NCBI RefSeq assembly: GCF_000142905.1
Contig: NW_013657624.1
Span: forward strand, 1-64,000
Source: Thecamonas trahens ATCC 50062
Taxonomy: Eukaryota > Protista > Apusomonadida
Length of the DNA stretch: 64,000 nucleotides
Direction: 5' to 3'
The stretch's first letter is position 1. Every line of letters begins with the position of its first letter. Shown piece by piece: positions 3,690 to 34,905 of the stretch. Both the position numbers and the translations under genes were made by a program. Below the pieces are notes generated by a model. That model was not told the DNA's origin and did not search any database. It saw only the letters and a program-made list of their open reading frames with translations.

Positions 3690-6346
3690 ATGCACCTAGT
3701 CACCCTCCTTTGCCTGATATTTGCATGTGTTGTGGCAGTCGACACGACGGTCATTCGCTCCGCACTGGCTGTTGTTGACCAGACCATGCATCCTACCGGC
3801 GACAATGTGGTCGACCTTGCCACCGACTCGCTCTTCGTTCCAACCGTCTTGGTGGGAAACCTCGCCTCGTCCACCGGGCTCGTCCACATCATCCCCACAA
3901 GCCGCCTCATTATCCCAGGCCTCGTTCTCGCTTCGCCGGCCAATGTTTCCGGTGCAGACCTTGAGCTCTGCATCGTCCCACCCGCATCCGTGGCGCATCT
4001 TGGCGAAGTTCCGAGCGGGCCAAGGCCATCGTGTCGCCATCGTGACCAGATGGCCTGTCAAACGCTTTTTTGGACCCGGTCTCGAGAACCACCGTGACAG
4101 GTCTCGACTCCATGCTGTCCAGCCTCGCCTCCTTGCTTGTCACATCCCATCCACCGCCCATCGCACTCTGTCTCAGGAGTGAAATGAGTGGTGTAACCTT
4201 TGAGGCCCCATCTCCTTCTCCAACTGTACTCATCGACTACTATGAGGTCTGCCCACAGCTGCTGGTCAAGAACGCGCACGTTGCCAACTCGCCACTGACG
4301 GGAACGACCGCCGCGCCGGTCGATGCTACGCTCATCGTCACATGCGAGTCGGGCCGCATCCTCTCAACGTCCCATGCCGCCAGTGGAACCGTCACCTGCC
4401 AGATATCAGGGGCATACTCGCCCACGGTCGTGTGTATCGATGCGGCTGCACTACCCTCGACGGATCCCTGCCCGCCGCGCTCGTTCCGCGACACCTGCGG
4501 AGTCTGCTCCGGGCTGGGCACGGGCCACGTTGCCAACGCCGATCTTGACGCATGCGGTGTGTGTTTTGGCGAAAATGCCGCGCTGGACGATTGTGGCGTG
4601 TGCTTTGGCAACAACGCCGCGATGGACGAGTGCGGCGTGTGCTTTGGCGACGGGTCGCAGTGCGCCGGCTGCGACGGGGTGCCCAACTCGGGTGCACGTC
4701 CGGATGTTTGCGGACAATGCATGGGCAATGGGTCGTCATGCTTGGGATGTGATGGCATTGTCATCCCATCCGGGGGCGCCACCTTTGACAGCTGTGGCGT
4801 ATGTGGTGGTTCCGCAGGCAGCACTGACTGCGCGACGCCGTGCGATGGTGACGCTGCCATCTACGACTGCGCAGGCACATGCGGAGGCGATGCCGTCATG
4901 AACGCATGTGGCGCATGTGTTGGCGGTGTCACTGGTCGCCCCGTTGACTATGGCCGCGACGACTGCGGCGTCTGTTGGGGCGGAAACCTCGCGAAGGACC
5001 GATGCGGCGTGTGTTGGGGCCGGGACACAGGCATCGATGCATGTGGCCAGTGTCACGGCGGTGGAGCCGGGCGCGATGCATGCGGCGTGTGCCACGGCGG
5101 TAACGCCACAATGGATGCGTGCGGGGTATGCGGTGGCGATGGTCTCTCGTGTATCGGCTGTGACCTTGTCCACTTTTCCGGCAAGGAAGTCGACGAGTGC
5201 GGCGTGTGCGACGGCGAGTCCGAATGCTCCGTTGCTTCGATGGTGGCTACCACATCGCACTCACGCAAACGTACCCTCCGCATTGTTGCTGTAGCAATTG
5301 GCAGCACCATGCTCTTGGCAATGGTCATAGTCATCGGCATCGCCGCATGCCTGCCTTCCATCAAGAGGCGCGGCCGGTCGTCCCGTGTTGACGTTGCAAG
5401 CCCGCACACGCTCGCAGATGCCGAGGCCGTCACATCAAGCCAGTCTGCTACATCATCAAGGCACGTCACAGAAGTCGTCGTTGGGAAAGAGACTACTATC
5501 GGGCTAGCTGTCGTCATGGTGGCCACGGTTGCCGACGATGAGCAAATGCGGGTGTCTCATTCCGCCGCAATGCGCGATGCCACCATACTCCACAACGTCG
5601 CTTTTCGCCATGTCCTGGCACAAACATCTGGGTGCGAGCTTGCTGCTGCGCAAACTACCTTTACCGCTGTATTTCCTCACAACGCCGTCGACGAGGCCAT
5701 CGCCACCGCCGACAAGCTTCACACGACCATGCTCAAAGTTCCTTGGCCGCGGGAGATCAGCCACTTTGTCGGCCGCAGCAACGACTCGCTTGCTGTGGAC
5801 TTTCCAGGTAGGTCAACCTTGGGCGCATCAGATCAGAGCACATCGCTTCCTCACGACGCGGCCCCAGCTCTTTGGAATGGCTTTCGACTGTGCATCGGGC
5901 TGCACATCGGGCACATCGACGCCATGCCCACTGCATACGACGGCGATCCCTCCTTCCCGGGCCCTGCCGCCGAATCTACTGCGACCATCGCCGCCCTTGC
6001 GCCACCAGGCACCACTGCTGCCTCGGAGTGCCTCTTGGCAGCTTCTACGTCCCACGACATCGTGGCAGTGCGCATCGCCAATGTCGATGACATAGAGAGG
6101 GCCTCATCGTCTACCTCGGTCTACAGTGTCGGCCACTGCGACTCACTCGCCGTCAACCGGCTTGTTGCAGCCGGTCTTGTGCCCCCATCTCCATCACCTG
6201 GCCGCTTGATCTTGTCGGCAGATCTGGAGTCACAGTTGTCGACCCCGAATGAGTTGTCGGAAACGACCACCATGTCGTTTGGCCCAATGGTCCCTACTGG
6301 GCCATCTGGGTCTCCGATGGCCGCACAGAAAATGCGCATCCCTTAA
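3690..6346 (+). CDS. Cys-rich single-pass receptor with degenerate class III cyclase domain (paralog A); frameshift near 4046
   Basis: Signal peptide MHLVTLLCLIFACVVA from ATG 3690. Reading continues in the 4070 frame after a -1 shift. YYEVC sushi-like module, CGVC repeats, TM (IVAVAIG...IAACL) and WNGFRLCIGLHIG cyclase strand. Confidence 0.75.
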
Positions 6347-6925
6347 CTCACCTGCGTGGGTTGCATGGCATCTCTCCTCTTGCTGGGCCTGGTACACAGT
6401 TCGCGCTGCATGCGTACCGCTCCATCGGCGAGCGTGGCACAATTGCATGCATCTTTCCATCCGGCCATTTTGATCGCAACGCCACGCTCACCGCTGCCCG
6501 CCGCCGCACAGCAATCCTGCCCCCTTACTTCCGATTCCCGCTACGGGCTCCGATGGCGTCGACAGAGTCGGCTCTTGAAGAGTGCTGGCCCAACGGCCTG
6601 ACCCTCTGTGCCACCACATCTTGCCGATTGGCTCGGTGACTCGCGCGCACATGGGCAATCGTCACAAGCTCGCGTTCGAAAAATTAAAGCAAGACTTGGG
6701 CGGCCAGAAGATGCCTGTCGTCGTTGTCGAACATCGTCATCAACTGGTGGGTGGTGGGTTCACAGAGCGATCGCTCGGCCAGCAACCGAAGCTGGTGTTG
6801 CATTTGTTCGTTGGCTCGCGAGTGCGGATGCGGATGCGGCCCGACACTGACTCAACTCAGACACCCGCCGCTCAGGCACGCCACCCGCCCCGGGCCAACC
6901 GCATCAGACAACAACTCCACTGCAG

Positions 6926-9900
6926 ATGGTGGTATCAATACCAACCGCCCTACTCACGCTATGGCTGCTCGTGCTGGTCCCTGCCGCGAGTCCAGCCACT
7001 CTCCGCGTCGCCGTCGCCACCTTGCCATCGGCCGACTTCGCCGCCGCCTGGACAGCTTCCCCACCCACACTTGTTCCTCGCGCATCGGAAGCCACCCTCA
7101 CCAGCAATGCCTCGCTAATCCTCAACATCCGCTTTCCCCTCGCCATCCACTCGACAACAGGCCACATTGCTGCTGCTGCGTCTTCGTCGATCGTCTTGAA
7201 CGGCATCGCCTTTCATGCCCCTCCTCCATGGCTGCTATCGCTCGTTCCGCTTCCGCTCCCCGCGCATCCGTCACTCTCGCTCCATCACTCGCAATGGCTT
7301 GCGCTGGCGACAGCTTCGCCAGCAAATGCCCCTTTTGCGCAAATGTTGGTCTCGGTTGCCAACAACACGCACGTAGCTGGTCAGCTCTCCGGCGAGGCGC
7401 TCGCTCACTGGATCGACGCCGCCTGGTCGACTGGCGTTCTTGGCGGAGAGTACCTGCCGATCCGCCTCAGCCTCCCAGACAACGCCACTGCAGACGACTA
7501 TGCCATCGTCGACCTCTCCACTGGCGCATTGCTCATGATCCACTACTACGAAGTCTGCGAGCCCTTGTTCCTACCCAACGGCTTGCCACTCGCGTCTCCC
7601 GTCCCGGTCGGTGACGATGTGGCACTCGTATGCAACAATGGCTACGAGCTTGTCGGTGCCGGTAGTGACGGATTAGTGACGTGCACCGCCGACGGGACGT
7701 ACCAGCCGCAAACGCCAGCATGTCGTCCTGTGCCTGATCCCCCTGACGCCGGGCCATGTCCTGGCCTGGCGATCCGTGACACCTGCGGCGTCTGCTCCGG
7801 TCCGGGCACCGCTCACATCGCCGACTCGGATCTCGACGCGTGCGGTGTGTGCTTTGGTGCTAATGCCGCGCTCGATGACTGTGGCGTGTGCTTTGGCAAC
7901 AACGCTGCCAAGGACGCATGTGGTGTGTGCTTCGGCGACGGATCGCGATGTGCCGGCTGCGACGGGGTGCCACACTCGGGATTGCTCCCGGACGTGTGCG
8001 GGCTATGCGGTGGCGATGGGACGTCATGCCTTGGATGCAATGGCATCCCCATTCCATCTGGCGATGCTGTCTTTGACGGCTGTGGCGTGTGCGGTGGCCC
8101 AGGGACTGTCGGCTCTTGCGGCGCGACGTGCAACGCGTCGGCACCTCTCCACGTCAGCTACGACTGCGCAGGGGTCTGCGGTGGCTCGGCGTACATCGAC
8201 TCGTGCGGCGCATGCGTGGGTGGGATTACTGGAAAACGTCCCGAGTACGCACGCGATGGCTGTGGTGTGTGCTGGGGCGGCAACTCGAGTCGCGATGCGT
8301 GCGGAGTATGTGGCGGTGGCGGCACGGACATCGACGACTGCGGCGTGTGCTTTGGCAACAACAGTGAGAAAGACGAGTGCGGCCGATGTTGGGGAAACAA
8401 TGCGTTTCATGATCTGTGCGGCGTGTGCAACGGGAGCGCAACCACCTGCGCCGGCTGCGACTTTGTCATTGGCTCCAAGCTCCGCATCGACGACTGTGGT
8501 GTGTGCGGTGGGCAGGGTGATTGCCACTCTACCCGCATTCTCGGCATGCCCTCGATGGCGGTGGCGTTGACTACAGCTGTGATGCTCTTCTGTGTTTTGG
8601 CAATCATCGGCCTTGGCACCGCAGTCTTGCTTCTGGCGCGTCGGCGGCGTCGGGCAAAGGTAGCCGCAACGGCGGCGATCCGAAAAGCAGCCCTGGCCGA
8701 GGCTCCACACGGCGAGCTGATCTTGATGGTCACCCACGTTGTGTCTGCCTCGGATATCTGGGCCGCCATGCCGGCTGCCATGTACGAGGCCATGCTCCAG
8801 CACGACATCTGTCTCCGGCAGGTCATCTCCGAGTATGACGGGTACGAGATTGCGTCTGAGCATGACTCGTTTGTCGTCGCCTTTCCGGCATCCGAAGCCA
8901 TTTCAGCCGTCCACGCCGCCATCGCCATCCACGATCGCATGGTCACCCTCGCATGGCCACGGGTTCTTCTCACCTCCGACCTCTGTCCAACCGTTGTGGC
9001 CCACACAGGCCTCAACGTCTCCCACGATGGCAGTTTATGCCACACCTGGCGCGGTCTTCGGCTCCGTATCGGCATCCACGCCTGCCTCCTCACTCGATCG
9101 TACTCGCCGGCGAGCCAGGGCATTGAGTACGCCGGTCCCGGTCTCGCACACACATCTGTCATCTCCCAGGCCGCGCCCGATGGCGCTGTCGTGGTCACCC
9201 GCGAGGTCCTCGCCTGCCTTCCGTCGACACTGCCGGCGCATCTCTCAATCGAGTGCGTCGACCGCGTCGTCTCGGCCAACGGCGACGTCTCCTTTGACAT
9301 CTTTGCCGTTTCCGCCCAGGGCTCTGTCACTACGGCCCGCAAAACGACTGGCCCAGTCGCATCGAGTCATGCTCTTGCTCATAGCGAGAGTGGACAAGTA
9401 GGCGGGGTCTCGTCAGCGACGCCTGTCCATGTCTCGACCACGAGCCGGTCTAGACACCTTGTCCTGAACACCCGGCTCACCAGCACGAGTCAGAAGCAGA
9501 GCGCAGGCTCGGCCCCGCACGAAGCCTCGTCGACGTCGTTCCGCTCGGCATCGTCGGACGATACCGAGACCACTGTTCGCTCGCGATCGCGTCGGTCCTT
9601 AACTCCAGCCATGAGCAATCGGAGCCAACGCTCGACCCAGGCTCGCAAAGTCCGAAATGTAAGACCGAAGCGCTTGCCCCGATCGTCTTCGGCAGCTGGC
9701 TCGCTTGAGATGCATGTCACGGGGCCCTGCAAGGCACCTGGTGCTGGCTCTATCGAAATGCCATCTCCCAACGCCATGATCAACGAGCTACTAGCCGCAA
9801 CGTTGGCCAACATGGCGCCCGAGTCCAGCAAGCATACCGCGCCGAAAGGCCCAAGAACGATTCTAAGTCGACGGAACGGGCATCCCTCTACGTCACAATC

Positions 9901-10171
9901 GCCGTCGCGGTCGCAGTCGCGGTCGCAGTCGCGGTCGCTGTCGGTCTCACTGGCGTCACGCGCATTAGAACAGCCGGCCTGGGTCAATTCTCGCCGACGC
10001 ATCCGGTCGCTTTCGGTTTCCGAGACGCCACAGACACCTCACACACGCATGCTCTCGGCCTCGTGCAACGGCACATCCATCATCGTCGAAGACGCTCACG
10101 CGACAGCCTCCCAAGCCCGTGCCGGAGCAGCGCCTGTGGCCTTGGACGGCGACGCGAACCGGGCACGGTAG
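6926..10171 (+). CDS. Cys-rich single-pass receptor with degenerate class III cyclase domain (paralog B)
   Basis: Intact 1081-aa ORF: signal peptide, YYEVC sushi-like module, many CxxC repeats, TM + RRRRR, GYEIASEHDSFVVAF, WRGLRLRIGIHA, Ser/Arg tail. Confidence 0.85.
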   Translation: MVVSIPTALLTLWLLVLVPAASPATLRVAVATLPSADFAAAWTASPPTLVPRASEATLTSNASLILNIRFPLAIHSTTGHIAAAASSSIVLNGIAFHAPPPWLLSLVPLPLPAHPSLSLHHSQWLALATASPANAPFAQMLVSVANNTHVAGQLSGEALAHWIDAAWSTGVLGGEYLPIRLSLPDNATADDYAIVDLSTGALLMIHYYEVCEPLFLPNGLPLASPVPVGDDVALVCNNGYELVGAGSDGLVTCTADGTYQPQTPACRPVPDPPDAGPCPGLAIRDTCGVCSGPGTAHIADSDLDACGVCFGANAALDDCGVCFGNNAAKDACGVCFGDGSRCAGCDGVPHSGLLPDVCGLCGGDGTSCLGCNGIPIPSGDAVFDGCGVCGGPGTVGSCGATCNASAPLHVSYDCAGVCGGSAYIDSCGACVGGITGKRPEYARDGCGVCWGGNSSRDACGVCGGGGTDIDDCGVCFGNNSEKDECGRCWGNNAFHDLCGVCNGSATTCAGCDFVIGSKLRIDDCGVCGGQGDCHSTRILGMPSMAVALTTAVMLFCVLAIIGLGTAVLLLARRRRRAKVAATAAIRKAALAEAPHGELILMVTHVVSASDIWAAMPAAMYEAMLQHDICLRQVISEYDGYEIASEHDSFVVAFPASEAISAVHAAIAIHDRMVTLAWPRVLLTSDLCPTVVAHTGLNVSHDGSLCHTWRGLRLRIGIHACLLTRSYSPASQGIEYAGPGLAHTSVISQAAPDGAVVVTREVLACLPSTLPAHLSIECVDRVVSANGDVSFDIFAVSAQGSVTTARKTTGPVASSHALAHSESGQVGGVSSATPVHVSTTSRSRHLVLNTRLTSTSQKQSAGSAPHEASSTSFRSASSDDTETTVRSRSRRSLTPAMSNRSQRSTQARKVRNVRPKRLPRSSSAAGSLEMHVTGPCKAPGAGSIEMPSPNAMINELLAATLANMAPESSKHTAPKGPRTILSRRNGHPSTSQSPSRSQSRSQSRSLSVSLASRALEQPAWVNSRRRIRSLSVSETPQTPHTRMLSASCNGTSIIVEDAHATASQARAGAAPVALDGDANRAR

Positions 10172-12687: not shown

Positions 12688-12955
12688 CAACTTGCCCAAA
12701 GCTCGATCCAGCACAGCCCGGCCCTACCCGGCCCAACTCGCCCCAGCACAGCACGATGTAGTCCACCCCCCTCCCTCCATCCCCCGTCCCCCTTTCCCCT
12801 CCCTTTCCCCTCCTCCCGATCAATCCCCCATCGCAAATGGTCATCCTTGTCGCCAAACCAGCGGCAAAGGCCAACCAAGTGCGACTCGGACGACGACCAA
12901 CCACCGCCACGACAGCACTTGACCCACCCCACCCCACCCCACCCCACCCCTACCC

Positions 12956-21800: not shown

Positions 21801-22568
21801 CGCCGACATCGTCGCCGCTCGCAGCGGGCAAAGTCGGTGACAGACCACAACGAGTCCCCATCAGCAGCAGCTGGTCTGCCGGACAGCAACTCTGACCTCT
21901 CAGCCGCAGACTTGGTCAAGATGTTGCCGCCCGGCCGGGTGTCGCCGCCCAAGCCCGGCGCCAAGCCCGATCCGCCGCGCCGAAAGCGCGCTATCACCTT
22001 GGGCGACTCTTACCCCGCCCGCCCACGCCTCGCCTGCCACCTTGGCTACTCGACCGAAGCACTGACATCTATCCTCTGCTCGGTGTCGAGCTCCGACTCG
22101 CCAGATCTGAGCGGAGATGACCGCTCGCCGCCGCGCGCCGCTGTCAGGCGCTCGTCGCGCATCATGCACGCCCTCAAAGCCGCGTCGGGTTCGTCGACGC
22201 CAGGGCCACTGCCCTCGGGCCAGTCGACATCGTCACGGAACTTGAAAGCCCGTGCCCGCCGTCGACTCCGTGTCCGCCGCGTTCTCAAGCACTCGGCATC
22301 GACCATGCTTCACCCGCTCGACATCATAGTCGAGCGCGACGACAGCGATAGTGGATGCAGCCCGGCCGTGGCTACCCGCCACTCGCCGGGCCGCCGCATC
22401 CGCACCCTCAAGCGATTCCGCTCCGAAGACATCACCCCTCGTCGGATGCCGGCCCAGCAGCGTTCGCGCCGCGTGCGTCGGCTCGAGTCGACACTCAACA
22501 CCTCGCACTCGGACTCACTCACACAGGTATCGCTTTCGCCGACCTCGCCCACCGTCCCAGAAAGGTAA
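18809..22568 (+). CDS. Cys-rich single-pass receptor with class III cyclase domain (paralog C); frameshifts at about 20718 and 21435
   Basis: Three consecutive ORFs joined by -1 shifts. The repaired text FAYCRRRSRRIGIL...ILITDVGSSTRLWED...RTEGDSFVVAF...WRGLRVRIGIHA is collinear with paralog D. Confidence 0.8.
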
Positions 22569-24973
22569 AGGTAGCGTTCATTTGGGGGGCGTGAGGTGGA
22601 CCGAGGTGTCGTCGCTCGAAGACCAGGAGAGCTCGTCGACAACCACCTGCCCGGTGAGGCACCGATACTTGGAGGCCAACCCCCGCTTGGAGTGCGCCAC
22701 GCTCGCCGACTGCCGCGCGACCATGACCCGTGATCGCCCGGTCTCCAGCCGCCTAGCCCGGGCCGCAATACTCCGTGGCCCTGACGTGGCTGGGGATTCC
22801 AGCGCTGTCGTTGACTGCAGCATCCGCGGACCCGGCTCGGGCGACTTGCTGCTCGCCGCCGACCGCGATGCGCCATTGGAGTGACAGATCGGGGTCAAAT
22901 CGGTCGACGCAGACGGCTGCAGCCGTCGGACCTTGCGCACCGACGACGTCGCCGAGCTTTCAAACTCAACCGACGAAAATCGCGACATGGCCCGATTCCG
23001 TTTCGACGATGCTCTTCGTGCCGGTTGCTCCGAGTTCCGCCGTGGCCCGTGAAGGTGTGCCAAGCTCTTGATGCGGCTCTTGACCAGTGACGCAGCGCTC
23101 GGTGTCGATCGCGAGCGTGTCCGCACATGAGTTCCAGTCTTGGTCACAAGTTAACCTTGCCATGGTTGCTGTGGTCGCTGCAATCGCTGCTGCCTCCTGC
23201 GCTGCTGCTTCCAGGTGCAGGCGCGCCAAAGCCACTCCGGCCCGAGGTCGGCGTCTGGCTCCTCGGCGACAGCAGCGTTGCAGATGCGCGCGACGGCGAG
23301 CACGAGAGGAGATTGCGTCGCGAGCCAGCTCTCGAGCCCGATGGCGACCGTGATTGCGGTCTTGATCCGAGGCCCCGTGGTGTCTGTCTCCGAGGAGACG
23401 CCATTGCCGACGCTGGAACCGACACCGACGCCGAGCATGAGCCAGACGGCGATGCAAACCGATGCTCGGGTGTCGGCGAGAGTGAGGTCTGCGGCCGCTT
23501 CCGAACCCGCGTGCGAGTCCTAGGTCGCCGCAGCGAGGCAGTTGATGCATCGTGCGAGAGTGAGGCCGGCGTCGACGTCAGCGTCGCCGCCGCATTCCGC
23601 TCGCCAGCAGTGAGGACAATCGTCGCAGCGTCTTTGCCGCTCTTCGCCTCGTCCTCGAGAGGCGGTAGCCGTGCAAAGACCCGCTCGGCAAGGACAGACC
23701 CTTCCGCCGTGACGGTGTGGATGTCAAAAACTGTGCTACACGACGACGCAATCCGGCCCACATGGTGGATCATGACACTCTTGGGCACGCTGGAGCCCAG
23801 AAGCGACAGCATCTCGGACGAGAGCACAACTTGCCCAGCCTCGCCGGCCGACGTCACCGCGTCCGCGTGCGACATGCTCGCGCCACCATACGCCGCGCGC
23901 AGCGACCGCTCGTCAAACGTTCGCATCGGCGTACATGCGTGGAGTCCGACTCGCACGCGGAGCCCGCGCCAAACGTATTGCAGGCCTCCGGTGACTGCCG
24001 AGTGGCTCCGGAGTACCGATCCACACAGCTGGTGGTTGAGCAACTCGCGAGGCCAGTCCAGCTGGACGAGTCGGTCCTGGATGGCAACTGCAGCCTCGAG
24101 CGCTACGCACGCGGCCGACGCCGGAAAGACAACGACAAATGAGTCGCCTTCTGTTCGCACAAAGTACGCTCCGGCGTCCATGAGAATCTGGCGGACTGCC
24201 GCGTCATGGACGTCGGTCGCTGCCTCCATTGCATCCGGCACGTCCTCCCACAGCCTGGTCGAGTTCCCCACATCCGTGATGAGCACAACCACGAGGCCGC
24301 CAGGTGCCGCTGCCAGCGCAGCGTCGCGCTTCTCGACAAGGATGCCGACCCTCCGCCGCCGCCGCCGTCGCCAAGAGATGATGGCAATGGCCAGGGCCAG
24401 AAAGACCGAGAGTAGGCACGTCGTGCCGCCGAGCACCACAAGGCTCGAGATCGAGCCGGTCCCGCCCGACTCGCGTACGGCGCAGTCGCCGAACCCGCCG
24501 CACACGCCACACGCGTCGAATACCTTGTTCGAGTTGGCGACAGAGTCACATCCCACGCAGCTGGTGCCGTTGCCGCTGCACACGCCGCATACATCCTTGC
24601 TGCGGTCAGAACCAAAGCACACACCGCAGCTGTCGACATGCACATCGCCGCCGTCACAGATGCCGCAGGCGTCACGACGCGCGTTGTTGCCGTGACACTC
24701 GCCGCACACGTCGCGAGCACGATCGCCGCCAAAGCAATCGCCACAGCTGTCCTTGAACGCATTCGGCATGTTTGGCGTCGAGCCCTCGACGCACATGCCA
24801 CAGTCGTCGATGTATGCGGTGCCGTTGCAAACGCCAAAGCAGTCGTAGACGGCAGTCCCGTTGGCCAGGCACGACGTCGCGCACGCCGAGATGCCTGACG
24901 GCCCGCCACACACGCCGCATCCGTCGAACCAAACGCCGCCCAGCGGGATTGGAATAAAGTTGCAGCCAGAGCA
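20126..24973. repeat. Long inverted repeat pair (about 20126-20487 and 24612-24973) inside paralogs C and D
   Basis: Manual comparison finds about 360 bp with 2 mismatches. Flanking parts of the Cys-rich region are also highly similar. Confidence 0.85.
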
Positions 24974-26389
24974 CCCGGACGCGTCGCCGCCGCACTCGCC
25001 GCACACATCGGGCACTTTGCCCGAGTTGGGTACGCCGTCACAGCCTGCGCAGCTCGCGTTGTTGCCGTAGCACACCCCGCAAGCATCCATAGCGGCGTTG
25101 CTGCCAAAGCAAACGCCACAATCATCGAGCGCGGCATTGGCACCGAAGCAAATACCGCAGACATCGCGATCCGAGTCAGCGACGTGGCCGGTGCCCGGGC
25201 CGGAGCAAACGCCGCAAGAGTCGAGAGAGGCCGGCGGGGCGCAGGGCGGCGGCGGTGGCGGGGATGGCGGTGGTGGCGGGGATGGCGGCGGCGGCGAGAA
25301 AGGCGGCGGCGGTGACGGCGGCGGTGGCGGCGGGCTCGGCGGTGGTGGCGGGCTCGGCGGTGGCGGCGGGCTCGGCGGTGGCGGCGGGCTCGGCGGTGGC
25401 GGCGGGCTCGGCGGTGGCGGTGGGCTCGGCGGTGGTGGCGGGCTCGGCGGTGGCGGCGGGCTCGGCGGTGGCGGCGGGCTCGGCGGTGGCGGTGGGCTCG
25501 GCGGTGGTGGCGGTGGCGGACTTGGTGGCGGAGCGCAATAGGGTGAGGCCGGCGAGTACGCGCCAGTCGAGGTACACACAACATCATTGGATGCCGACGC
25601 GCCGTAGAGGGTTAGTCCTGAGCCACACGACAGCGCAAGCGCGTCCCCGATGGGCGCAAACGGCCCGCCAGTGGTGGAGTCGTCTGTCACCGTCCCGCTC
25701 GGCAGCGAGAGGATGCCACAGACACGATAATACTTGACCGTCAACGTTGGGGACGGGCTCCGCAGCTCGATTCTACAGTCTCCTGATGTGCATCCGCTTG
25801 TCCGTGAGGCACGGATGACCAGCGAGTCATCGACATAGCCGCCGTTGTCGAACGCGTCCTGTAGCAGGGCGCTGACCGCAGCACCCGTCAGCGGAAAGGA
25901 TGTACCACCAGTATCGCCGACATAAAAGGTATGAACCGTTGTCGAGTCTGTCATGGTGTCGAAAGAGTCATCTGCAGCCCATGGCAGCTCATCGTAGCGT
26001 GCGGCTCTCTCTGCCGGAGAGAGCGGAGCAAAGTATGTGACACCGATGGAGAAGGTATTGCTTGCGATGACCTCTTTGACGAGAAAAGATGAAGAGGCAT
26101 CAATCCATACAGATCCTGTTGAAGAGGTAATAGGTGAAGAAGAGAAATCAAAGTTAATCGAGAGCACTCGCTCTGCACCCGTATCAAAGCGGACATGAGA
26201 AGGTGCTGCCGCCACAGTGCCATCAACTTTCATTGTGCCAACAAATTGGTCATCCTGCGGTACTCCCGTTGCCGTGAAAACTGTTCCGCCCTTCACCCCA
26301 CCGACCATCACGCCCACCATGAGGTACCAAAGCCCTATCCATGTCAATTGTATCAATGTCTTCTTGCGCAACAACATGCTACACGACAT
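22578..26389 (-). CDS. Cys-rich single-pass receptor with class III cyclase domain and long (SPPPPP)n stalk (paralog D); frameshift at about 23150
   Basis: Signal peptide from ATG 26389 or 26377, YYRVC sushi-like module, SP5 repeats, CGVC repeats, TM + RRRRRRR, LITDVGNST, RTEGDSF, WRGLRVRVGLHA. The tail probably continues into ORF 22578-23147. Confidence 0.8.
25250..25530 (-). repeat. 18-bp coding tandem repeat encoding Ser-Pro5
   Basis: GGGCTCGGCGGTGGCGGC-type units repeated about 10 times on the + strand. Confidence 0.85.
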
Positions 26390-29240: not shown

Positions 29241-29290
29241 GCGTAGCCCGCTCAGCCTCGCGTTCGCTAGCATCATCTTTGCTTGCAAGG

Positions 29291-32224
29291 CTACCACAAA
29301 TCAAACTCACCGTCGGGTCGCAGCGATAAGCTTCGCCGCCGTCCGCTAGACTCGGCAGCCTCGGTTGCAGCCGCCACTGCAGCAATCGCCCGCTGAACGC
29401 CTGGCGACTCGAGCGGCGAGTGCTGCGAAGTCGACAACGATCGCCGTCGACTGTTCGACGAATGCGACTGCCCACTTCTGACTCCAGAGCCCGAGCGAAG
29501 ACGGTTGTACGAGCGGCGGGAACGCGACCGCGACATTGATTGTGACTCGTCCGTTTGCGAATGCGAGCTGGGCGACATAGGGATCGACGGCAGACCGGCC
29601 GATGTACGCTTCGAGGCCGACATCGCTCTCTGTCGCGACTCTGTGTGCCGGCCAGATGGGCGGCCCAGGTCAGATCCCAGCTGCGGCAAATCATGAGAGC
29701 CCAGCGATGACGACCGCCGACGGCGCCGCGTCTGCTTTGCAGCAATGGTGTCGACAACCGACGCAAAGTTGATCACGTCTGGCTCGGCCCGCGTTGATGA
29801 TCTACGGTGTCCCCGCGCTGGGCCTGTCGAGCCCGAGACAAGCGAGATTTCGGCCGGAGTCAACTCGATTGTGTGTCCCGATCGGCTGTTGGCATTCGAC
29901 ACAAACGAGTCACGCACTGACGACCGCGTGATGCCACCAAGAAACTGTGTCGACTGCTCGTCCTCCTTGGACGAGATGCTCATCAATGCAGAGGCACTCG
30001 CATCTCTCTCGCCAAACCGCCGCTCCGAGACCACGTGGCCAAACGCGACCAGCGAGTACGCATCCGGCATTTGTGCGCCGTGCGCTCTCCGCTGACTACG
30101 CACTGACCCAGCCATCGGCGAAATCGCCATGTGGGACGGCATGGGCGAGGGAAACATCTCCAGCGTAGAGATCGAAACACCCACCGAGCCTGCATCGCAC
30201 ATGTGTGCAAGCGTCGAGGCCAACCCAAGTCCAGAGCCCGAGTACATGACTGAGCCATCTGGAAACGTCTCACGCTCGAGGAGGCAGGCATGGAGAGCAA
30301 CGCACACTCGAAGCCCGCGCCAGATGTACATCAGCCGCCCAAATGGTGCGTTCCAGATCGGCCGCCCGATCTTCGACCGACAACGCCGATGCGTCAAAAT
30401 CTCCTTGGGCCACTCGGCCTCGACCAGTCGATCGTGGATCGTCATGGCCGCAGTTGCCGCAGCCACCGCCTGGTCAGCGGGAAACACAGCCGTAATCATC
30501 CCACCTGATGTCGTCACAACGTACCCGCGGTACTCCTTGACAACAGCCCGGACAACCTTGCGGTAGATCTGACAGCTCGTGTTGAGTGCTGCCGGAATCT
30601 CGGCCCGTAGCAGCTCTGCGCCCTTGACCATGGTTGTAAAGACTATAACCACACCGTCGGGCGGTGAGATCGCCTCACCGTCGCTGCCGGTCTCTGCCTG
30701 TTCCGAGTCGATGGGCGACACAGCATGAGAGCCGCGAGTGGTGAAGAAGAACAGCGCAGCAATGAGGCCGATTGCAGAGCAGAGGAAGCAGAGCGCGAGA
30801 GAGACCGTCACCGCAATGGTGGTTCCGAGCGACGACGATGATGAGCCCGACTTGATGCATGAACTCGTTCCGCCACACACGCCACACGAGTCGACCCTCG
30901 CCGACGAGCCGACCACCCAGTCGCAGCCTGCACAGCTCGTCGAGTTGCCGCCGCACACGCCACACACATCCATCGTCTTGTTGCCACCCCAGCAGCGCCC
31001 ACAGCCATCGCGGGCTCTATCGCCTCCGTGGCACACCCCGCACGAGTCCAGTGCTGCGTTGGTGCCAAAGCAGACCCCACACGTGTCCTTGGCCGCGTTC
31101 CCGCCCCAGCACATTTCGCAGTCGTCGCGGGCAAACGATTCGGTCCGACCAGTACTTCCGCCCACGCACGCGCCGCATCCATCCATGTATGCAGATCCGC
31201 CGCACTCGCCGGCACAATCGTACACACCGCTCCCGTCCGGGCTGCACCCTGTCGCGCACTCGCCAATCCCCGAGCTCCCGCCGCACACGCCGCAGCCATC
31301 GTAGTGGGCGCCGCCAAGCGGGATTGGAATTCCGTCACATCCGAGACACGAACTTGCATCACCGCCACACACTCCGCACACATCCGACCGCGTGCCTGAG
31401 CCAGCCACACCGTCACATCCGGTGCACTGCTCTCCGCCGCCAAAGCACACGCCGCACACATCTTTGTCGCGATTCTCGCCAAAGCAAACACCACACTCGT
31501 CGAGATCGTTGTTCTTCCCAAAACACACCCCGCATCCATCCACATCAGCATTCGCCACATGGCCTGTCCCAGGTCCAGAGCAAATGCCGCATGCATCGAG
31601 AAAGGCCGGCGGATCGCACTCAGCGCTCGGCAAGTTCTGCCTGCTCGCTGATTGCCCGCTCCGGATGGCGATCTCGTCTGGCGACGGACTCACGCTCACC
31701 ATCTGCACCTCACTGCGCTGGCTGCACTCGTTAGCAAAGAGTGCAAGCAGCTCATCTCCGGTAACAACTGTTCGCAACATCTGGCCGCCATCGCCAACTC
31801 GCTCGACCACCAGAGGTAGGCGAGCAAAGGTGAGTGGCCTTTGTGAAGGCGGGCGAACATGACTGTCATGACGAGCTAAATTGGCTCCAACTATTGGTCC
31901 GAAGACTACGTTTGCAGTCGCTGACCGCATCAGCAACCTGTCCGGACCAGGCTGCAGCACCTTGTCACGAGGTACGCAGAAGATCGAGAGCTCAACAGAG
32001 CGTGGTGGTGGTGTGTAGCTCGTCATCCACGGCTTCGTCGTGTTCGCATACGTCAGGACAAGGCTATTCATGTCGTTGACAGCTTGCGGGTGAGTTGTAG
32101 TCATTCGGGCCAATGATGCCGCTCTGCTGGTGAACCGACCAGCCGAGGAGGAAGAACAGATGAGGAGGAAGACAAGGACGGCCACGCTTGCTCGATGTAC
32201 CGCCATCCCCAAATCGTGTACCAT
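29291..32224 (-). CDS. Cys-rich single-pass receptor with degenerate class III cyclase domain (paralog E, no sushi-like module)
   Basis: ATG 32224 or 32206 precedes signal VAVLVFLLICSSSSA; CGVC repeats, TM, WRGLRVCVALHA; both metal Asp positions are substituted. Confidence 0.8.
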   Translation of the reverse strand: MVHDLGMAVHRASVAVLVFLLICSSSSAGRFTSRAASLARMTTTHPQAVNDMNSLVLTYANTTKPWMTSYTPPPRSVELSIFCVPRDKVLQPGPDRLLMRSATANVVFGPIVGANLARHDSHVRPPSQRPLTFARLPLVVERVGDGGQMLRTVVTGDELLALFANECSQRSEVQMVSVSPSPDEIAIRSGQSASRQNLPSAECDPPAFLDACGICSGPGTGHVANADVDGCGVCFGKNNDLDECGVCFGENRDKDVCGVCFGGGEQCTGCDGVAGSGTRSDVCGVCGGDASSCLGCDGIPIPLGGAHYDGCGVCGGSSGIGECATGCSPDGSGVYDCAGECGGSAYMDGCGACVGGSTGRTESFARDDCEMCWGGNAAKDTCGVCFGTNAALDSCGVCHGGDRARDGCGRCWGGNKTMDVCGVCGGNSTSCAGCDWVVGSSARVDSCGVCGGTSSCIKSGSSSSSLGTTIAVTVSLALCFLCSAIGLIAALFFFTTRGSHAVSPIDSEQAETGSDGEAISPPDGVVIVFTTMVKGAELLRAEIPAALNTSCQIYRKVVRAVVKEYRGYVVTTSGGMITAVFPADQAVAAATAAMTIHDRLVEAEWPKEILTHRRCRSKIGRPIWNAPFGRLMYIWRGLRVCVALHACLLERETFPDGSVMYSGSGLGLASTLAHMCDAGSVGVSISTLEMFPSPMPSHMAISPMAGSVRSQRRAHGAQMPDAYSLVAFGHVVSERRFGERDASASALMSISSKEDEQSTQFLGGITRSSVRDSFVSNANSRSGHTIELTPAEISLVSGSTGPARGHRRSSTRAEPDVINFASVVDTIAAKQTRRRRRSSSLGSHDLPQLGSDLGRPSGRHTESRQRAMSASKRTSAGLPSIPMSPSSHSQTDESQSMSRSRSRRSYNRLRSGSGVRSGQSHSSNSRRRSLSTSQHSPLESPGVQRAIAAVAAATEAAESSGRRRSLSLRPDGEFDLW

Positions 32225-32436
32225 TGCTCCTTGCGAGCGAACAACGGTGGCAGGCTTGAAACAACGCTTCAGCGCGTTGCCCGTATGCCGCACCCTGGTC
32301 AAGTATTATCCGGTGTGTGGAAGAATCGAGTTGAGCCGCACGCGAGACGAAACTCGTAACAGTCGTTCAGCAGCGCAAGTGGTCAGCGGGGGGGTAGAGT
32401 GGGGGCACGTGCATGGGGAAGAAAAATATTGTTTCA

Positions 32437-34905
32437 TCATCGTGGGTGTAGGCTTGGGTACGGCGACGACAGCTCCGACGCCGAGACCTCGGGATCAGTT
32501 GGGGCGCGTGGTGGTGGCGTGTTGGTGATGGTGGCGCCGACGGACGAGAAAGCGCCAAAGGCGGGTCGGCTAAAACGAGAGTTGGGCCGGCCGAGGCCAA
32601 AGTCGCGGAGGGCGAGGACCGAGCCGTGGGCCGCCACCGAGTACAGCTCGGCTGGCGGTGAGAGCGACGAGTTGAGCGAGCCGTGCGAGCCCATGGATGA
32701 AGCCCGGGTGATGGGCAAGAGCGATGAGATGCAGTCGAGATACAACGGCGACGGCACCGGCGACGGGAGGAGCGAGACCACCTCCGCCGACGCCACGACC
32801 TGGCCTGGTCGGATGGCCTCGGCCGTCGCCTCGGCAACCTCGAGCACCTCGTCAATCGACGGGACGAGCAGCCGCTCGACGTCCAGACGGTCAGGTAGCA
32901 CGTTGGTGTCGACTGCAACCCGAATCCGGAGGCCACGCCAGACATAGCCGACAGCGTCATGCGTCAACCGCGGGTCGCCGCGAGTCATCTCCACCGGAAC
33001 CGCCGCCGCCGCAGTGTGGCCCAACAGCGCCTCGGGCCACGGTAGCGAGATGAGCTCGTTCTGCAGTGCGACGGCGGCGACGACCGCGTCCAGCGCGGCA
33101 TCGCGCGGAAACGCGCCGGCAAACGTGTGTGCCCGCCATTCGACGCCGTAGCCGCGATGGACTTGTACAATGCGCGAGGCTGCTGCCATGAACAGCCGCC
33201 ATGCCGCATCCATCGGCCCAGGGGCGTCGGCCCAGAGGATGTCGGCGTCGTCGACAATGACCAAAAGTACCACAACTGGTCCGCTGGCTGCTGGCGGTAG
33301 CGTCGTCAACTCGGTCTGGGCCCGTCGCGGCGAGTGAAGCGTGTGTTTGGACGACGCTATCCGCCGCAAGCCCGGGCGCCGGCGCTTAAGCATCTTCCGC
33401 GCCAGAACCACGCAGACGGTAACAGCGAGGACGAGAACGACGCAGCCCGAGATAGAGAGCGAGACCGAAAGCGCAACCGCTGTGAAATCTGAAGAGGACG
33501 ACGAGTCCAGCTCTCCCTCACCTGCTGCCTGCGCCGACAAGCACGTTTCGTTCTTCCCGCCGCACACCCCGCACGCGTCGAGATACGTCGGCGGTGTGCA
33601 CGGGGGCGGTGGTGGGGTCGGCGGCGCTGGGGGCAGTGGCGGCGGTGGGGGCAGTGGCGGCGGTGGTGCCGGTGGACTTGGGAATCCTGAAGGTGTGGTT
33701 GATGGCGGCGACGGTGGCGGTGACGGCGGTGGTGGCGGTGGTGGCGGCGAGAGTGGCGGTGGTGATGGCGGCGGCGACGACGGCGGCGGCGGTGGCGGCG
33801 ATGGGGGCGGCGGTGACGGCGGTGGTGGCGATGGGGGCGGCGATGGGGGCGGTGGCGGCGGCGGCGATGGCGGCGGTGAATACTGAGTCTCACAAAACAC
33901 CCCAGAAGGAGAATAGCTGCCATCGGCGTTGCAGCGGACGCGACCGCCAGGCTCGGCCCCGACAATGGCGCTGTTAGGTGCGGTGCATTCGAGCTCGACA
34001 GTCTTGTTGTACGACGCGGACTTGCTGCCAACAATAGTCACGCCGGTCACAGGCGTGTACTTGGGGCATCCGCGATCCAGGTCGAGGACGAGCGTCATTG
34101 GCGAGCTGAGCCCAATGGTGGCATGCTCAGGCGTCGTCATGGCGTCGGATGCCAACTGGTCATCATCATCGTCGTCAAAATGCCACGGGTGGGCGCGACC
34201 GTAGCCCACATTGCAGCCACGGAAAACAAGCATGAGGTAACGCCCGTCGATGGGTGAGCCAGGCGCGTTGCCCTCGGCCCAGGCGGCGTCCATCAGAGCG
34301 CGCCAGCTGTCACCGCCAAGGAGTGTGGGTGAGCTCGAGCCTGGTACGGTGATCACCGCAGACTCGCGCATGACGGCATAGACCGAGCTCGAGTCAGGCC
34401 AGGTGCTGCCAGACGTAAACGCCTTGTTCTTTCGCGATGGGCTGGTAATGGTGAGCGAGACGTTGATGCAGACCTCGGCTGCATCAAAGGGATATACTCT
34501 CTCGATCAGCACGCCCGAGAGCTCGGTAAAATGCGCCGAAAAAGGCGCAGTCAAGCCCTCAGACGAGGCAGGATCAACTTCCTTGGGCAAGTGAAAACTG
34601 GCCACAATGCCCTCGCCGGCACCGATCTCAGCGCCAAAGCGCTCGATAATCGGATCGCCTGGCAGCCGAAGAACGCCGTACCCCGAGCTATCGTGCTGAA
34701 CAGCCTGGTGGATGCGCGCCGACTCTAAGTTGCGGGTAGAGACCAGCCTCTGCGAGTCTGGATCTGGGTCGCCATAGTTGAAGGCCGGCCGTGGACTCGA
34801 TGGCGCGCCAGCGAGAACGACAGCGGCGAGACTCACAGCCAGCACGATGCACACCTGCAAGCTGTGCGAGCGAGAGGAATGAGATAGTTGCATGACCCGA
34901 GGCAT
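32437..34905 (-). CDS. Single-pass receptor with polyproline stalk and degenerate class III cyclase domain (paralog F, one Cys repeat)
   Basis: Signal VCIVLAVSLAAVVLA, sushi-like C...C...CNADGSYSP...C, long Pro stalk, DACGVCGG, TM, WRGLRIRVAV. Start assigned to ATG 34905. Confidence 0.75.
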   Translation of the reverse strand: MPRVMQLSHSSRSHSLQVCIVLAVSLAAVVLAGAPSSPRPAFNYGDPDPDSQRLVSTRNLESARIHQAVQHDSSGYGVLRLPGDPIIERFGAEIGAGEGIVASFHLPKEVDPASSEGLTAPFSAHFTELSGVLIERVYPFDAAEVCINVSLTITSPSRKNKAFTSGSTWPDSSSVYAVMRESAVITVPGSSSPTLLGGDSWRALMDAAWAEGNAPGSPIDGRYLMLVFRGCNVGYGRAHPWHFDDDDDDQLASDAMTTPEHATIGLSSPMTLVLDLDRGCPKYTPVTGVTIVGSKSASYNKTVELECTAPNSAIVGAEPGGRVRCNADGSYSPSGVFCETQYSPPPSPPPPPPPSPPPSPPPPSPPPPSPPPPPPSSPPPSPPPLSPPPPPPPPSPPPSPPSTTPSGFPSPPAPPPPLPPPPPLPPAPPTPPPPPCTPPTYLDACGVCGGKNETCLSAQAAGEGELDSSSSSDFTAVALSVSLSISGCVVLVLAVTVCVVLARKMLKRRRPGLRRIASSKHTLHSPRRAQTELTTLPPAASGPVVVLLVIVDDADILWADAPGPMDAAWRLFMAAASRIVQVHRGYGVEWRAHTFAGAFPRDAALDAVVAAVALQNELISLPWPEALLGHTAAAAVPVEMTRGDPRLTHDAVGYVWRGLRIRVAVDTNVLPDRLDVERLLVPSIDEVLEVAEATAEAIRPGQVVASAEVVSLLPSPVPSPLYLDCISSLLPITRASSMGSHGSLNSSLSPPAELYSVAAHGSVLALRDFGLGRPNSRFSRPAFGAFSSVGATITNTPPPRAPTDPEVSASELSSPYPSLHPR

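What the first reader, a model, noticed from the sequence alone, without database searches (positions are those of the whole stretch)
3690..34905. Cluster of six Cys-rich receptor pseudo-cyclases: candidate undescribed signalling system
Seen: six paralogs (A 3690-6346, B 6926-10171, C 18809-22568, D 22578-26389, E 29291-32224, F 32437-34905). All share signal peptide, ectodomain, D-x-CGVC-x-G repeats, TM, cyclase homology domain and Ser/Arg tail. Known: the T-D-x-x-x-S-T-x-L-W, T-x-G-D-S-F and W-x-G-L-R-V-R-x-G-x-H motifs are those of trypanosome ESAG4/GRESAG4 and fungal-type class III cyclases. These enzymes need two Asps plus the N-x-x-x-R pair. In all six the N/R segment is substituted (A GPAAESTATI, B GPGLAHTSVI, C GACMAHADTI, D GASMSHADAV, E GSGLGLASTL, F unalignable), so none should work as a homodimer. 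Inference: an expanded family of catalytically dead or partner-dependent receptors with diversified ectodomains.
Basis: partly seen in the sequence, partly recalled or inferred. Interest (0 to 1): 0.85.

Follow-up and report, generated by a model that had tools for sequence, protein, structure and literature searches.

The report
Receptor genes with degenerate cyclase domains
Six intact neighbouring genes of the marine flagellate Thecamonas trahens encode cell-surface receptors whose inner cyclase domain has lost the residues needed to make cAMP or cGMP alone. They belong to a genome-wide family of at least 29 such receptors, only one of which still looks like a complete enzyme.

Summary
Window = Thecamonas trahens ATCC 50062, contig C56:1-64000. 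A, B and C lie on the + strand; D, E and F on the - strand. All six are intact single-pass receptors.

- **Gene integrity:** A's apparent frameshift is a missing T in a T-run, which other runs restore. C needs two GT-AG introns.
- **Domain identity:** All six inner domains are class III cyclase homology domains of the fungal/trypanosome type. Pfam passes only B, C and D; an independent profile hits all six, and F's model folds like GRESAG4.
- **Catalytic residues:** All six lack the substrate Lys/Asp and the transition-state Asn/Arg. C and D keep both metal Asps, as in the C1 half of animal cyclases. B keeps one. A, E and F keep none.
- **Family size:** At least 29 genes, eight on this contig. 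One is canonical (contig C68) and one is C2-like (contig C9); an environmental relative of the latter shows the same pattern.
- **Selection:** The Cys-repeat ectodomain is under purifying selection. The cyclase domain evolves faster.
- **Ectodomain:** A jelly-roll resembling carbohydrate-binding modules, a Sushi domain and ADAMTS-type Cys repeats. F has only one such repeat.

Reading: pseudo-cyclase or partner-dependent receptors. This is a new variant of a known kind. Activity and pairing are untested. The scan noted similar receptors elsewhere in this genome.

The parts
3690..6346 (+). Gene A: signal peptide, N-terminal domain, Sushi, 13 Cys motifs, TM (about 5282-5338), degenerate cyclase domain, short tail. 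The assembly reads it in two frames (3690-4066 and 4070-6346).
   Evidence: One search shows an extra T behind 4065 in runs X1 and X5, which restores one ORF.
4064..4069 (+). T6 run where the assembly lacks one T relative to two other data sets. This is the cause of A's apparent frameshift.
5513..6085 (+). A cyclase homology domain. Catalytic positions D1/K/D2/Dspec/N/R read A/A/T/S/E/T. Very long branch in the tree.
   Evidence: (E 9.7e-9)
6926..10171 (+). Gene B (annotated AMSG_10263), one ORF of 1,081 aa.
6992..7777 (+). B N-terminal jelly-roll domain resembling carbohydrate-binding modules, followed by a Sushi/CCP domain.
   Evidence: PF00084; 8wab_B Z 11.9; 7vbo_A Z 11.6; CCP Z 7.4, rmsd 1.7
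7763..8545 (+). B Cys-rich D-x-CGVC-x-G repeat region, an ADAMTS_CR_3-like module.
   Evidence: 702 proteins, many carrying PF19236
8672..9250 (+). B cyclase homology domain. Positions read H/A/D/E/A/V.
   Evidence: (25.5 bits)
18809..22568 (+). Gene C (AMSG_10270). Exons run to 20713, then 20773-21408, then 21552-22568. The introns are 59 and 143 nt, both GT..AG.
20773..21408 (+). C cyclase homology domain, contained in one exon. Positions read D/R/D/A/A/T, a C1-like half-site.
   Evidence: (E 7.5e-36)
23144..26389 (-). Gene D, 1,081 aa, with a long SPPPPP stalk.
23750..24337 (-). D cyclase homology domain. Positions read D/R/D/A/S/A, a C1-like half-site.
   Evidence: 31.2 bits; 1fx4, E 6e-15
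29291..32224 (-). Gene E, 977 aa. It has a different N-terminal domain and no Sushi domain.
30116..30694 (-). E cyclase homology domain. Positions read M/T/G/M/G/T.
   Evidence: (E 5.9e-14)
32437..34905 (-). Gene F, 822 aa: a large N-terminal domain, Sushi, a long proline stalk, a single CGVC motif and a TM helix.
32716..33318 (-). F cyclase homology domain. Positions read I/E/H/P/E/A. The fold model matches GRESAG4.
   Evidence: E 9.5e-11; pLDDT 82; 1fx4, E 3.7e-9, TM 0.60

Best explanation
The six genes are intact and probably expressed. They belong to a Thecamonas trahens family of at least 29 type I membrane receptors.

**Architecture.** Outside the cell they carry a variable N-terminal domain, which in A to D is a jelly-roll resembling carbohydrate-binding modules followed by a Sushi domain. 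Next comes an optional proline-rich stalk and then a conserved array of ADAMTS-type Cys repeats. Inside the cell sits a class III cyclase homology domain of the fungal/trypanosomal type, usually followed by a Ser/Arg-rich disordered tail.

**Shown by sequence.** In the clade that holds all six genes, the domain has lost the substrate-binding Lys/Asp and the transition-state Asn/Arg.

**Inferred.** None of the six can form a complete active site as a homodimer.
- C and D keep both metal-binding Asps. That makes them equivalent to the C1 half of animal adenylyl cyclases. They could be catalytic only in a heterodimer whose partner supplies Lys/Asp/Asn/Arg. Candidates in this genome are the C2-like receptor on contig C9 and the canonical receptor on contig C68.
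- A, E and F, and largely B, have lost the metal ligands as well. They are true pseudo-cyclases. Their inner domain most likely serves as a ligand-controlled dimerisation or scaffold module, or as an inhibitory partner of active receptors.
For: **Genome identity:** P0002 (AMSG_10270) equals gene C, and its contig length of 238,995 equals that of C56.

**Domain identity:**
- PF00211 passes its cut-off in B, C and D.
- The best solved relatives of D are GRESAG4.3 and GRESAG4.1.
- A profile built from 119 fungal and bacterial domains, with none of the paralogs in it, hits all six at E 1e-8 to 1e-36.
- F's model has pLDDT 82, and its best structural match is 1fx4.

**Residue table:**

**Family and phylogeny:**
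- At least 29 genes join Cys repeats to a cyclase domain.
- All six fall in an 11-member clade (SH-aLRT 99), inside a 19-member clade that lacks N/R.
- Both metal Asps survive in 23 of the 27 degenerate members, which argues that they are still used.
- The segment that replaced N/R is itself conserved: M-[AS]-H-A-D in C, D, G and C18 (M-H-H-A-D in C73).

**Candidate partner:** the C9 gene reads R/K/D/D/N/R. The environmental protein P0150 is 54% identical to it and has the same pattern.

**Not pseudogenes:**
- The open frames are long.
- The Cys region has omega 0.10 to 0.26 where dS could be estimated. For C versus D, dN is 0.053 and dS 0.24.
- Contigs at least 99% identical from three metatranscriptome studies lie on A and B. 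Run X1 covers only A and its 3' flank.
Against: - No activity, binding or localisation was measured.
- dS is saturated for the cyclase domains, so constraint on them cannot be quantified. A and F have very long branches (4.1 and 3.3 changes per column), which would also fit near-neutral decay of that domain.
- The RNA-library contigs cannot prove transcription, because DNA carry-over is possible.
- Only one C2-like candidate exists for about 20 C1-like genes. It keeps one metal Asp, and nothing shows that it pairs with C or D.
- F's fold model depends on the family alignment.
- Some class III cyclases tolerate non-canonical residues.
Confidence: 0.7

Rival explanations
1. Combinatorial heterodimeric cyclases. 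The roughly 20 receptors with a D-R-D pattern, including C and D, are ligand-specific 'alpha' chains. Each is active only when paired with a shared 'beta' chain that supplies Lys/Asp/Asn/Arg (the C9-type receptor, or the canonical C68 type). The pair would form one active site and one dead site, as in animal tmAC C1/C2 or sGC alpha/beta. Under this reading A, B, E and F are decoys.
For: The patterns are complementary: D/R/D/x/x/x against R/K/D/D/N/R. The Asp pair is kept in 23 of 27 degenerate members. The C9 pattern recurs in a protein 54% identical to it from an environmental assembly. The same ectodomain module occurs in both types. Precedent from my own knowledge, not checked here: complementary point mutants of Rv1625c restore activity as heterodimers (Guo et al. 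2001).
Against: Pairing is untested, and the one complex prediction gave no verdict. C9 sits on a long, poorly placed branch. Four of the six genes in the finding cannot take part as catalytic subunits.
Confidence: 0.3
2. Dominant-negative or decoy receptors. The dead domains heterodimerise with active receptor cyclases and silence them, which would tune cAMP output.
For: A, B, E and F lack every catalytic residue class yet keep the conserved core motifs W-P and W-R-G-L-R, and F keeps a predicted cyclase fold. Only one canonical member exists in the Cys-repeat family. From my own knowledge, not checked here: Sanchez et al. 1995 (J Biol Chem 270:17551) reported that an inactive Leishmania receptor cyclase paralog inhibits an active one. 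I verified only that this paper exists, through the reference list.
Against: There is no evidence of interaction. A ratio of 27 regulators to one or two active receptors would be unusual. The conserved Asp pair in most members is not explained by pure inhibition.
Confidence: 0.2
3. The domains are still enzymes, using non-canonical residues or a different substrate or reaction. An example would be use of the conserved His and Asp of the M-[AS]-H-A-D motif.
For: The replacing motif is conserved within subclades. The metal Asps are kept in C and D.
Against: Four separate residue classes (Lys, Asp, Asn, Arg) are lost at once. A, E and F also lack the metal ligands. I know of no precedent for cyclase activity without both Asn and Arg.
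Confidence: 0.07
4. The loci are decaying, untranscribed pseudogenes.
For: A is frameshifted in the assembly. The cyclase domains of A and F have very long branches. Pfam fails to detect the domain in A, E and F.
Against: The frameshift is absent from two other data sets. The open frames run 820 to 1,080 codons at 62% GC. Omega is 0.10 to 0.26 in the Cys region. RNA-library contigs lie on A and B. The paralogs are deeply diverged yet all intact.
Confidence: 0.05

Closest known systems
Trypanosomatid receptor adenylate cyclases (ESAG4/GRESAG4, Leishmania RAC)
   Same: Type I single-pass topology with a large ectodomain and one C-terminal class III domain. They are the closest solved sequences (1fx4, 1fx2). 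Both are large, clustered, lineage-specific gene families (PMC7719234).
   Different: The trypanosomatid ectodomain is of the periplasmic-binding-protein type, whereas here it is a jelly-roll, Sushi and Cys repeats. The GRESAG4 sequences aligned carry Asn and Arg at the transition-state positions; here Lys, Asp, Asn and Arg are all replaced.
Pseudo-heterodimeric cyclases (animal membrane AC C1/C2, soluble guanylyl cyclase alpha/beta)
   Same: Catalytic residues are split between two homologous domains. C and D match the C1 pattern, with the metal Asps kept and the Asn/Arg/Lys/Asp lost. The C9 gene approaches the C2 pattern.
   Different: Here the two halves would lie on separate single-pass receptors, with many C1-like genes to one C2-like gene. 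Pairing has not been shown.
Fungal Cyr1-type and bacterial STAND-type class III domains
   Same: These are the nearest active sequence relatives of the domain, sharing the motifs T-D-x-x-x-S-T-x-L-W, T-E-G-D-S-F and R-V-R-M-G-I-H.
   Different: They are soluble LRR/PP2C or ATPase-fused enzymes. The Allomyces and bacterial references aligned here carry the full catalytic set.
Acanthamoeba kinase-cyclase-kinase receptors
   Same: A large protist-specific family of single-pass receptors with an intracellular cyclase domain: 67 genes (PMC4053784).
   Different: Those have flanking kinase domains and other ectodomains. No kinase domain is present here.
ADAMTS_CR_3-like Cys repeats (PF19236)
   Same: The D-x-CGVC-x-G units match a module found in more than 700 proteins of amoebae, bacteria and others.
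   Different: In the hits listed, the fusion of this module to a cyclase domain appears only in T. trahens and a few environmental proteins.

Membership tests
Class III nucleotidyl cyclase homology domain (PF00211) | Sequence match over Pfam's gathering score | tested here: inconclusive
   B scores 25.5 bits, C 25.7 and D 31.2, against a cut-off of 21.9. A, E and F give no hit at E<0.1. A subfamily profile hits all six at E 1e-8 to 1e-36.
Class III nucleotidyl cyclase homology domain (PF00211) | Cyclase fold | tested here: met
   F's model (pLDDT 82, pTM 0.82) best matches 1fx4 and 1fx2 at E 3.7e-9 and TM 0.60, followed by many other cyclases. The model depends on the family alignment. Only F was modelled.
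Catalytically competent homodimeric class III cyclase | Two metal-binding Asp | tested here: not met
   Both are kept in C and D. B keeps one. A, E and F keep none.
Catalytically competent homodimeric class III cyclase | Transition-state Asn and Arg | tested here: not met
   Replaced in all six. N/R read A: E/T; B: A/V; C: A/T; D: S/A; E: G/T; F: E/A.
Catalytically competent homodimeric class III cyclase | Substrate-specifying Lys/Asp (or Glu/Cys for GTP) | tested here: not met
   The Lys position reads A, A, R, R, T, E in A to F. The Asp position reads S, E, A, A, M, P.
Catalytically competent homodimeric class III cyclase | Measured cAMP or cGMP synthesis | not testable with these tools
   Needs an enzyme assay or cya- complementation.
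Trypanosomatid receptor adenylate cyclases | Signal peptide, one TM helix and a C-terminal cyclase domain | tested here: met
   Hydrophobicity scan and domain order.
Trypanosomatid receptor adenylate cyclases | Ectodomain of periplasmic-binding-protein type | tested here: not met
   B's ectodomain model is a jelly-roll resembling carbohydrate-binding modules plus a CCP domain, followed by Cys repeats.
C1/C2-type heterodimeric cyclase | One subunit with the metal Asps only, the other with Lys/Asp/Asn/Arg only | tested here: inconclusive
   C and D fit the C1 pattern. One C2-like receptor (C9, R/K/D/D/N/R) exists, and a 54%-identical environmental protein shows the same pattern. A, B, E and F fit neither half.
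C1/C2-type heterodimeric cyclase | Physical heterodimer of the two subunits | not testable with these tools
   The single complex prediction returned no verdict. This needs co-purification.

The most novel reading that the evidence does not exclude
T. trahens may run a combinatorial receptor-cyclase system. About twenty glycan- or ligand-specific single-pass 'alpha' receptors would carry only the metal-binding half of the active site. They would make cAMP or cGMP only when ligand brings them together with one shared 'beta' receptor that carries the complementary half (the C9 type). Fully dead paralogs such as A, B, E and F would act as decoys. That would be an independent, intermolecular version of the C1/C2 split of animal adenylyl cyclases, in the sister lineage of animals and fungi.
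Probability: 0.27. Interest if true: 0.75.

Novelty: new variant of a known kind. Interest (0 to 1): 0.55.

Why it matters
Receptor-type cyclases and split-site cyclases are both known. A large family of single-pass receptors in which nearly every member keeps only the metal-binding half of the site, or nothing, has not turned up in the papers I could search. Apusomonads are the sister group of animals plus fungi, so the family bears on how pseudo-heterodimeric cyclases and pseudoenzyme receptors arise. It also gives a directly testable set: about 20 C1-like domains, one C2-like, one canonical and four dead, all from one genome. The carbohydrate-binding-module-like outer domain suggests these are glycan sensors of a bacterivorous flagellate, which is testable by glycan binding. 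On the practical side, the reference annotation of these loci needs correction: a frameshift in A, a fusion of E with F, and a Sushi domain spliced out of C.

Tried and rejected
- **Complex prediction:** It gave no verdict (score 0.00, no controls folded). It counts neither for nor against pairing.
- **ESM Atlas search of the Cys-repeat region:** only unnamed clusters at 0.84 to 0.85, which is uninformative.
- **Whole-library phmmer with D's cyclase domain:** the top hits were multi-domain cyclases. Apart from P0120 (44% identity), already known, I recognised no further non-Thecamonas relative of the window's clade. The library carries no names, so provenance could not be confirmed.
- **First own-genome search with full-length D:** the tool failed. 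I repeated it with B's ectodomain.
- **dN/dS on the cyclase domains:** dS is saturated (pS 0.6 to 0.77), so the ratios are not meaningful. Only the Cys-repeat comparisons of C, D and C18 are usable.
- **A's frame change as an intron:** rejected. No GT..AG pair of the right phase and a plausible length exists in 4008-4100, and reads show an extra T instead.
- **C as a frameshifted pseudogene:** rejected. Two GT..AG introns restore the frame and match the database model.
- **tRNA scan of the window:** none found.
- **Literature:** I found no paper on Thecamonas or apusomonad receptor cyclases, and no use of the term 'pseudo-cyclase' for class III domains in the listed hits.
- **Joined model of C:** a script joined C's exons only to confirm that the frame stays open. 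The joined sequence was not used in any search, fold or statistic. C was handled exon by exon or through the database protein P0002.

Full report
**Source and gene models**

The window is contig C56:1-64000 of a 28.7 Mb, roughly 62% GC, intron-poor eukaryotic genome. The database protein P0002 (AMSG_10270, Thecamonas trahens ATCC 50062) is identical to paralog C once introns are removed. Its contig length of 238,995 equals that of C56. The organism is therefore the apusomonad T. trahens.

The six genes are real.
- **A:** 3690-6346 on the + strand.
- **B:** 6926-10171 on the + strand.
- **C:** 18809-22568 on the + strand.
- **D:** 23144-26389 on the - strand.
- **E:** 29291-32224 on the - strand.
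- **F:** 32437-34905 on the - strand.

They are not a strict tandem array, because unrelated genes separate B from C and D from E. Two more paralogs lie just beyond the window on the same contig: G at about C56:77520-81003 and H at about C56:82000-85003.

Gene A is read in two frames in the assembly. The switch must fall between 4046 and 4094, where a T6 run sits at 4064-4069. Contigs of a metatranscriptome (X1) and of a run of the organism itself (X5) both carry one extra T there. That insertion is exactly what joins the two frames. A is therefore intact, and the assembly, or this strain's copy, lacks one T.

Gene C changes frame twice. Both changes are bridged by GT..AG introns of 59 and 143 nt, as in the database model. 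That model also removes 258 in-frame bases that encode the conserved Sushi domain, which looks like an annotation artefact.

The reference annotation fuses F and E into one model, AMSG_12337. E has its own start and signal peptide, and its closest relative G begins in the same way, so I treat E and F as two genes.

I ran no search or fold on a joined model of C. Its cyclase domain lies in the single exon 20773-21408.

**Architecture**

All six genes have an N-terminal hydrophobic signal and one TM helix between ectodomain and inner domain.

The Cys motif count is 11 to 13 in A to E but only one in F. Ser/Arg-rich tails of 165 to 264 aa follow the domain in B, D and E, and C has a comparably long C-terminal tail. 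A and F have short tails.

The D-x-CGVC-x-G repeats are not a novelty. More than 700 proteins from amoebozoans, bacteria and other organisms match them. Many of these carry Pfam PF19236 (ADAMTS_CR_3), in combination with integrin-beta, LRR, kinase and other domains.

I modelled the N-terminal region of B from a 13-row family alignment (pLDDT 84, pTM 0.78). It has two parts.
- **Residues 2-186:** a beta jelly-roll. Its best structural matches are a chondroitin-sulfate-binding module (8wab_B, Z 11.9, 158 residues aligned) and an alginate-binding module (7vbo_A, Z 11.6). These stand about 3 Z units above the next rows.
- **Residues 188-247:** a Sushi/CCP domain (Z 7.4, rmsd 1.7; PF00084).

A shared fold does not show function, so glycan binding is an inference. 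E and G carry a different N-terminal domain without Sushi, and F carries a larger one.

**The inner domain is a cyclase homology domain**

- Pfam PF00211 passes its cut-off for B, C and D only.
- D's best solved relatives are T. brucei GRESAG4.3 and GRESAG4.1, at E 6e-15 and 1e-12.
- Its best active sequence relatives are fungal Cyr1-type and bacterial STAND-type cyclases.
- I built a profile from 119 such domains, with none of the paralogs in it. It hits C at 7.5e-36, D at 1.3e-33, B at 6.4e-21, E at 5.9e-14, F at 9.5e-11 and A at 9.7e-9.
It matches 1fx4 and 1fx2 best (E 3.7e-9, TM 0.60), followed by dozens of other cyclases.

**Catalytic residues**

I read the six canonical positions against Allomyces and bacterial references. 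They are metal Asp 1, substrate Lys, metal Asp 2, substrate Asp, transition-state Asn and transition-state Arg.

| Gene | Asp 1 | Lys | Asp 2 | Asp (substrate) | Asn | Arg |
|---|---|---|---|---|---|---|
| A | A | A | T | S | E | T |
| B | H | A | D | E | A | V |
| C | D | R | D | A | A | T |
| D | D | R | D | A | S | A |
| E | M | T | G | M | G | T |
| F | I | E | H | P | E | A |

The HMMER alignment of D to GRESAG4 places Ser and Ala opposite its Asn and Arg.

In a head-to-tail class III dimer, each site takes the Asps from one chain and Lys/Asp/Asn/Arg from the other. This is established knowledge of the family. It follows that no homodimer of these proteins can assemble a complete site. 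That conclusion is inference, not measurement.

**Genome-wide context**

Six-frame searches found 53 PF00211 matches and about 30 loci with the Cys repeats. Combining them, at least 29 genes join the Cys-repeat ectodomain to a cyclase domain. Their catalytic patterns divide as follows.

| Pattern | Number of genes | Members or note |
|---|---|---|
| Canonical D/K/D/D/N/R | 1 | Contig C68 |
| R/K/D/D/N/R | 1 | Contig C9; C2-like, lacking one metal Asp but keeping the other half of the site |
| D/K/D with Gln or Leu at the substrate Asp and Leu or Met at the Arg | 6 | One of the six is only partly covered |
| D/S/D/E/H/A | 1 | |
| D/R/D with N/R lost | 15 | Includes C, D, G, H, C18 (AMSG_04505) and C30 |
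| D/N/D/H/H/A | 1 | Contig C73 |
| Metal Asp pair no longer intact | 4 | A, B, E and F |

In a tree of 45 domains, all six window genes fall in an 11-member clade (SH-aLRT 99). That clade sits inside a 19-member clade (99) that lacks N/R. A, B, E and F group together (80), with long branches for A (4.1 changes per column) and F (3.3).

Two points argue that most of these domains are still used rather than merely tolerated.
- Both metal Asps survive in 23 of the 27 degenerate members.
- The segment that replaced N-x-x-x-R is conserved within subclades. It reads M-[AS]-H-A-D in C, D, G and C18 (M-H-H-A-D in C73), and M-x-D-A-Q followed by G-D-C-G in the sister group.

Environmental proteins extend the pattern beyond this species.
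- P0150 is 54% identical to the C9 gene and has the same R/K/D/D/N/R pattern.
- P0157 is 60% identical to the C68 gene and is canonical.
- P0120 and P0127 are degenerate.

I recognised no closer non-Thecamonas relative of the window's own clade.

**Selection and expression**

Open frames of 820 to 1,080 codons are not expected by chance at 62% GC.

By the Nei-Gojobori method, the Cys-repeat region is 57 to 65% identical between most paralogs, with omega 0.10 to 0.26 where dS could be estimated. For C versus D it is 91% identical, with dN 0.053 and dS 0.24. The cyclase domains are only 20 to 55% identical, with pN 0.30 to 0.55 and saturated dS.

The inner domain therefore evolves faster than the Cys-repeat ectodomain, which is the reverse of what is usual for receptor enzymes. 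C and D are far more alike in the ectodomain than in the cyclase domain. That fits gene conversion or a partial duplication.

Contigs at least 99% identical from three metatranscriptome studies lie on A and B, with no splice joints. Run X1 covers A from 3698 to 6612 and nothing of B. That pattern fits a transcript better than DNA carry-over, but it does not prove transcription.

**Mechanism**

Shown by sequence:
- The genes are intact.
- The topology is that of a type I receptor.
- The inner domain is a cyclase homology domain.
- All six lack Lys/Asp/Asn/Arg, and C and D keep the Asp pair.
- One C2-like and one canonical receptor of the same family exist in the genome.

Inferred:
- C and D are C1-type half-site subunits that could be active only with a partner.
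- A, E and F, and largely B, are true pseudo-cyclases. They would act through dimerisation, scaffolding or inhibition, possibly with the Ser/Arg-rich tails as the output or regulatory element.

The one complex prediction gave no verdict.

**Comparison with known systems and novelty**

The family works like a receptor cyclase in topology and like the C1 half of animal cyclases in residue pattern. It fails the membership test for a competent homodimeric cyclase, and its ectodomain is not that of the trypanosomatid receptor cyclases.

I found no paper on these genes. The Acanthamoeba genome paper describes a different receptor-cyclase expansion, and the trypanosomatid survey reports many cyclase pseudogenes.

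Other agents of this scan reported further degenerate and split-site cyclases in this genome, so the theme is genome-wide.

I rate this a new variant of a known kind, of moderate interest. The most novel reading still open is a combinatorial alpha/beta receptor-cyclase system.

Noticed in passing
window 4064-4069: The assembly has T6 where a metatranscriptome contig (X1) and a run of the organism (X5) have T7. This creates a false frameshift in gene A.
   Followed up: yes
window 29291-34905 (-): The reference model AMSG_12337 (P0122) joins F and E into one 1,358-aa protein. It does so through a 740-nt 'intron' that removes F's stop and E's signal peptide and N-terminal domain. The model is probably chimeric.
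   Followed up: partly
window 19550-19807: The reference model AMSG_10270 removes 258 in-frame, stop-free bases of gene C that encode the Sushi domain conserved in the paralogs. This is likely a false intron.
   Followed up: partly
window 19772-21067 (+) versus 24031-25327 (-): The convergent genes C and D share a 1.3 kb inverted repeat at 80% DNA identity. In the Cys-repeat part dS is 0.24, but in the cyclase domain dS is saturated. That points to gene conversion or a partial duplication limited to the ectodomain.
   Followed up: partly
window 17971-18036: An exact (CCCCAA)11 tract (TTGGGG on the other strand) lies about 770 bases upstream of gene C's ATG. It is telomere-like but internal to the contig.
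   Followed up: partly
window 25223-25490 (D), 33580-33950 (F); L053 (C18 gene): SPPPPP-type proline stalks of very different length lie between the Sushi domain and the Cys repeats. They are long in D, F and C18, short in C, and absent in A, B and E.
   Followed up: no
L001 521-4003 (-) and L048 1-3003 (-), i.e. C56:77520-85003: Two further paralogs, G (D/R/D/A/S/A) and H (D/R/D/A/A/N), lie 13 to 21 kb beyond the window's end. The contig therefore carries eight family members.
   Followed up: partly
L051 1870-4677 (C9) and L052 1566-4325 (C68): These are the only family members with an intact Lys/Asp/Asn/Arg half. C9 reads R/K/D/D/N/R and C68 is fully canonical. Both have environmental relatives at 54 to 60% identity with the same patterns (P0150, P0157).
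   Followed up: partly
window 3600-9599, runs X1-X3: Contigs at least 99% identical to T. trahens genes A and B occur in aquatic, seawater and subsurface metatranscriptomes of three studies. The species or a very close strain is therefore present in those samples.
   Followed up: no
L016, L018, L020, L017, L028 (contigs C26, C41, C34, C49): A sister clade of six Cys-repeat receptors keeps both Asps and the Lys, and mostly the Asn. It has Gln or Leu at the substrate Asp position and Leu or Met at the Arg position. This is a second, different degenerate pattern.
   Followed up: no
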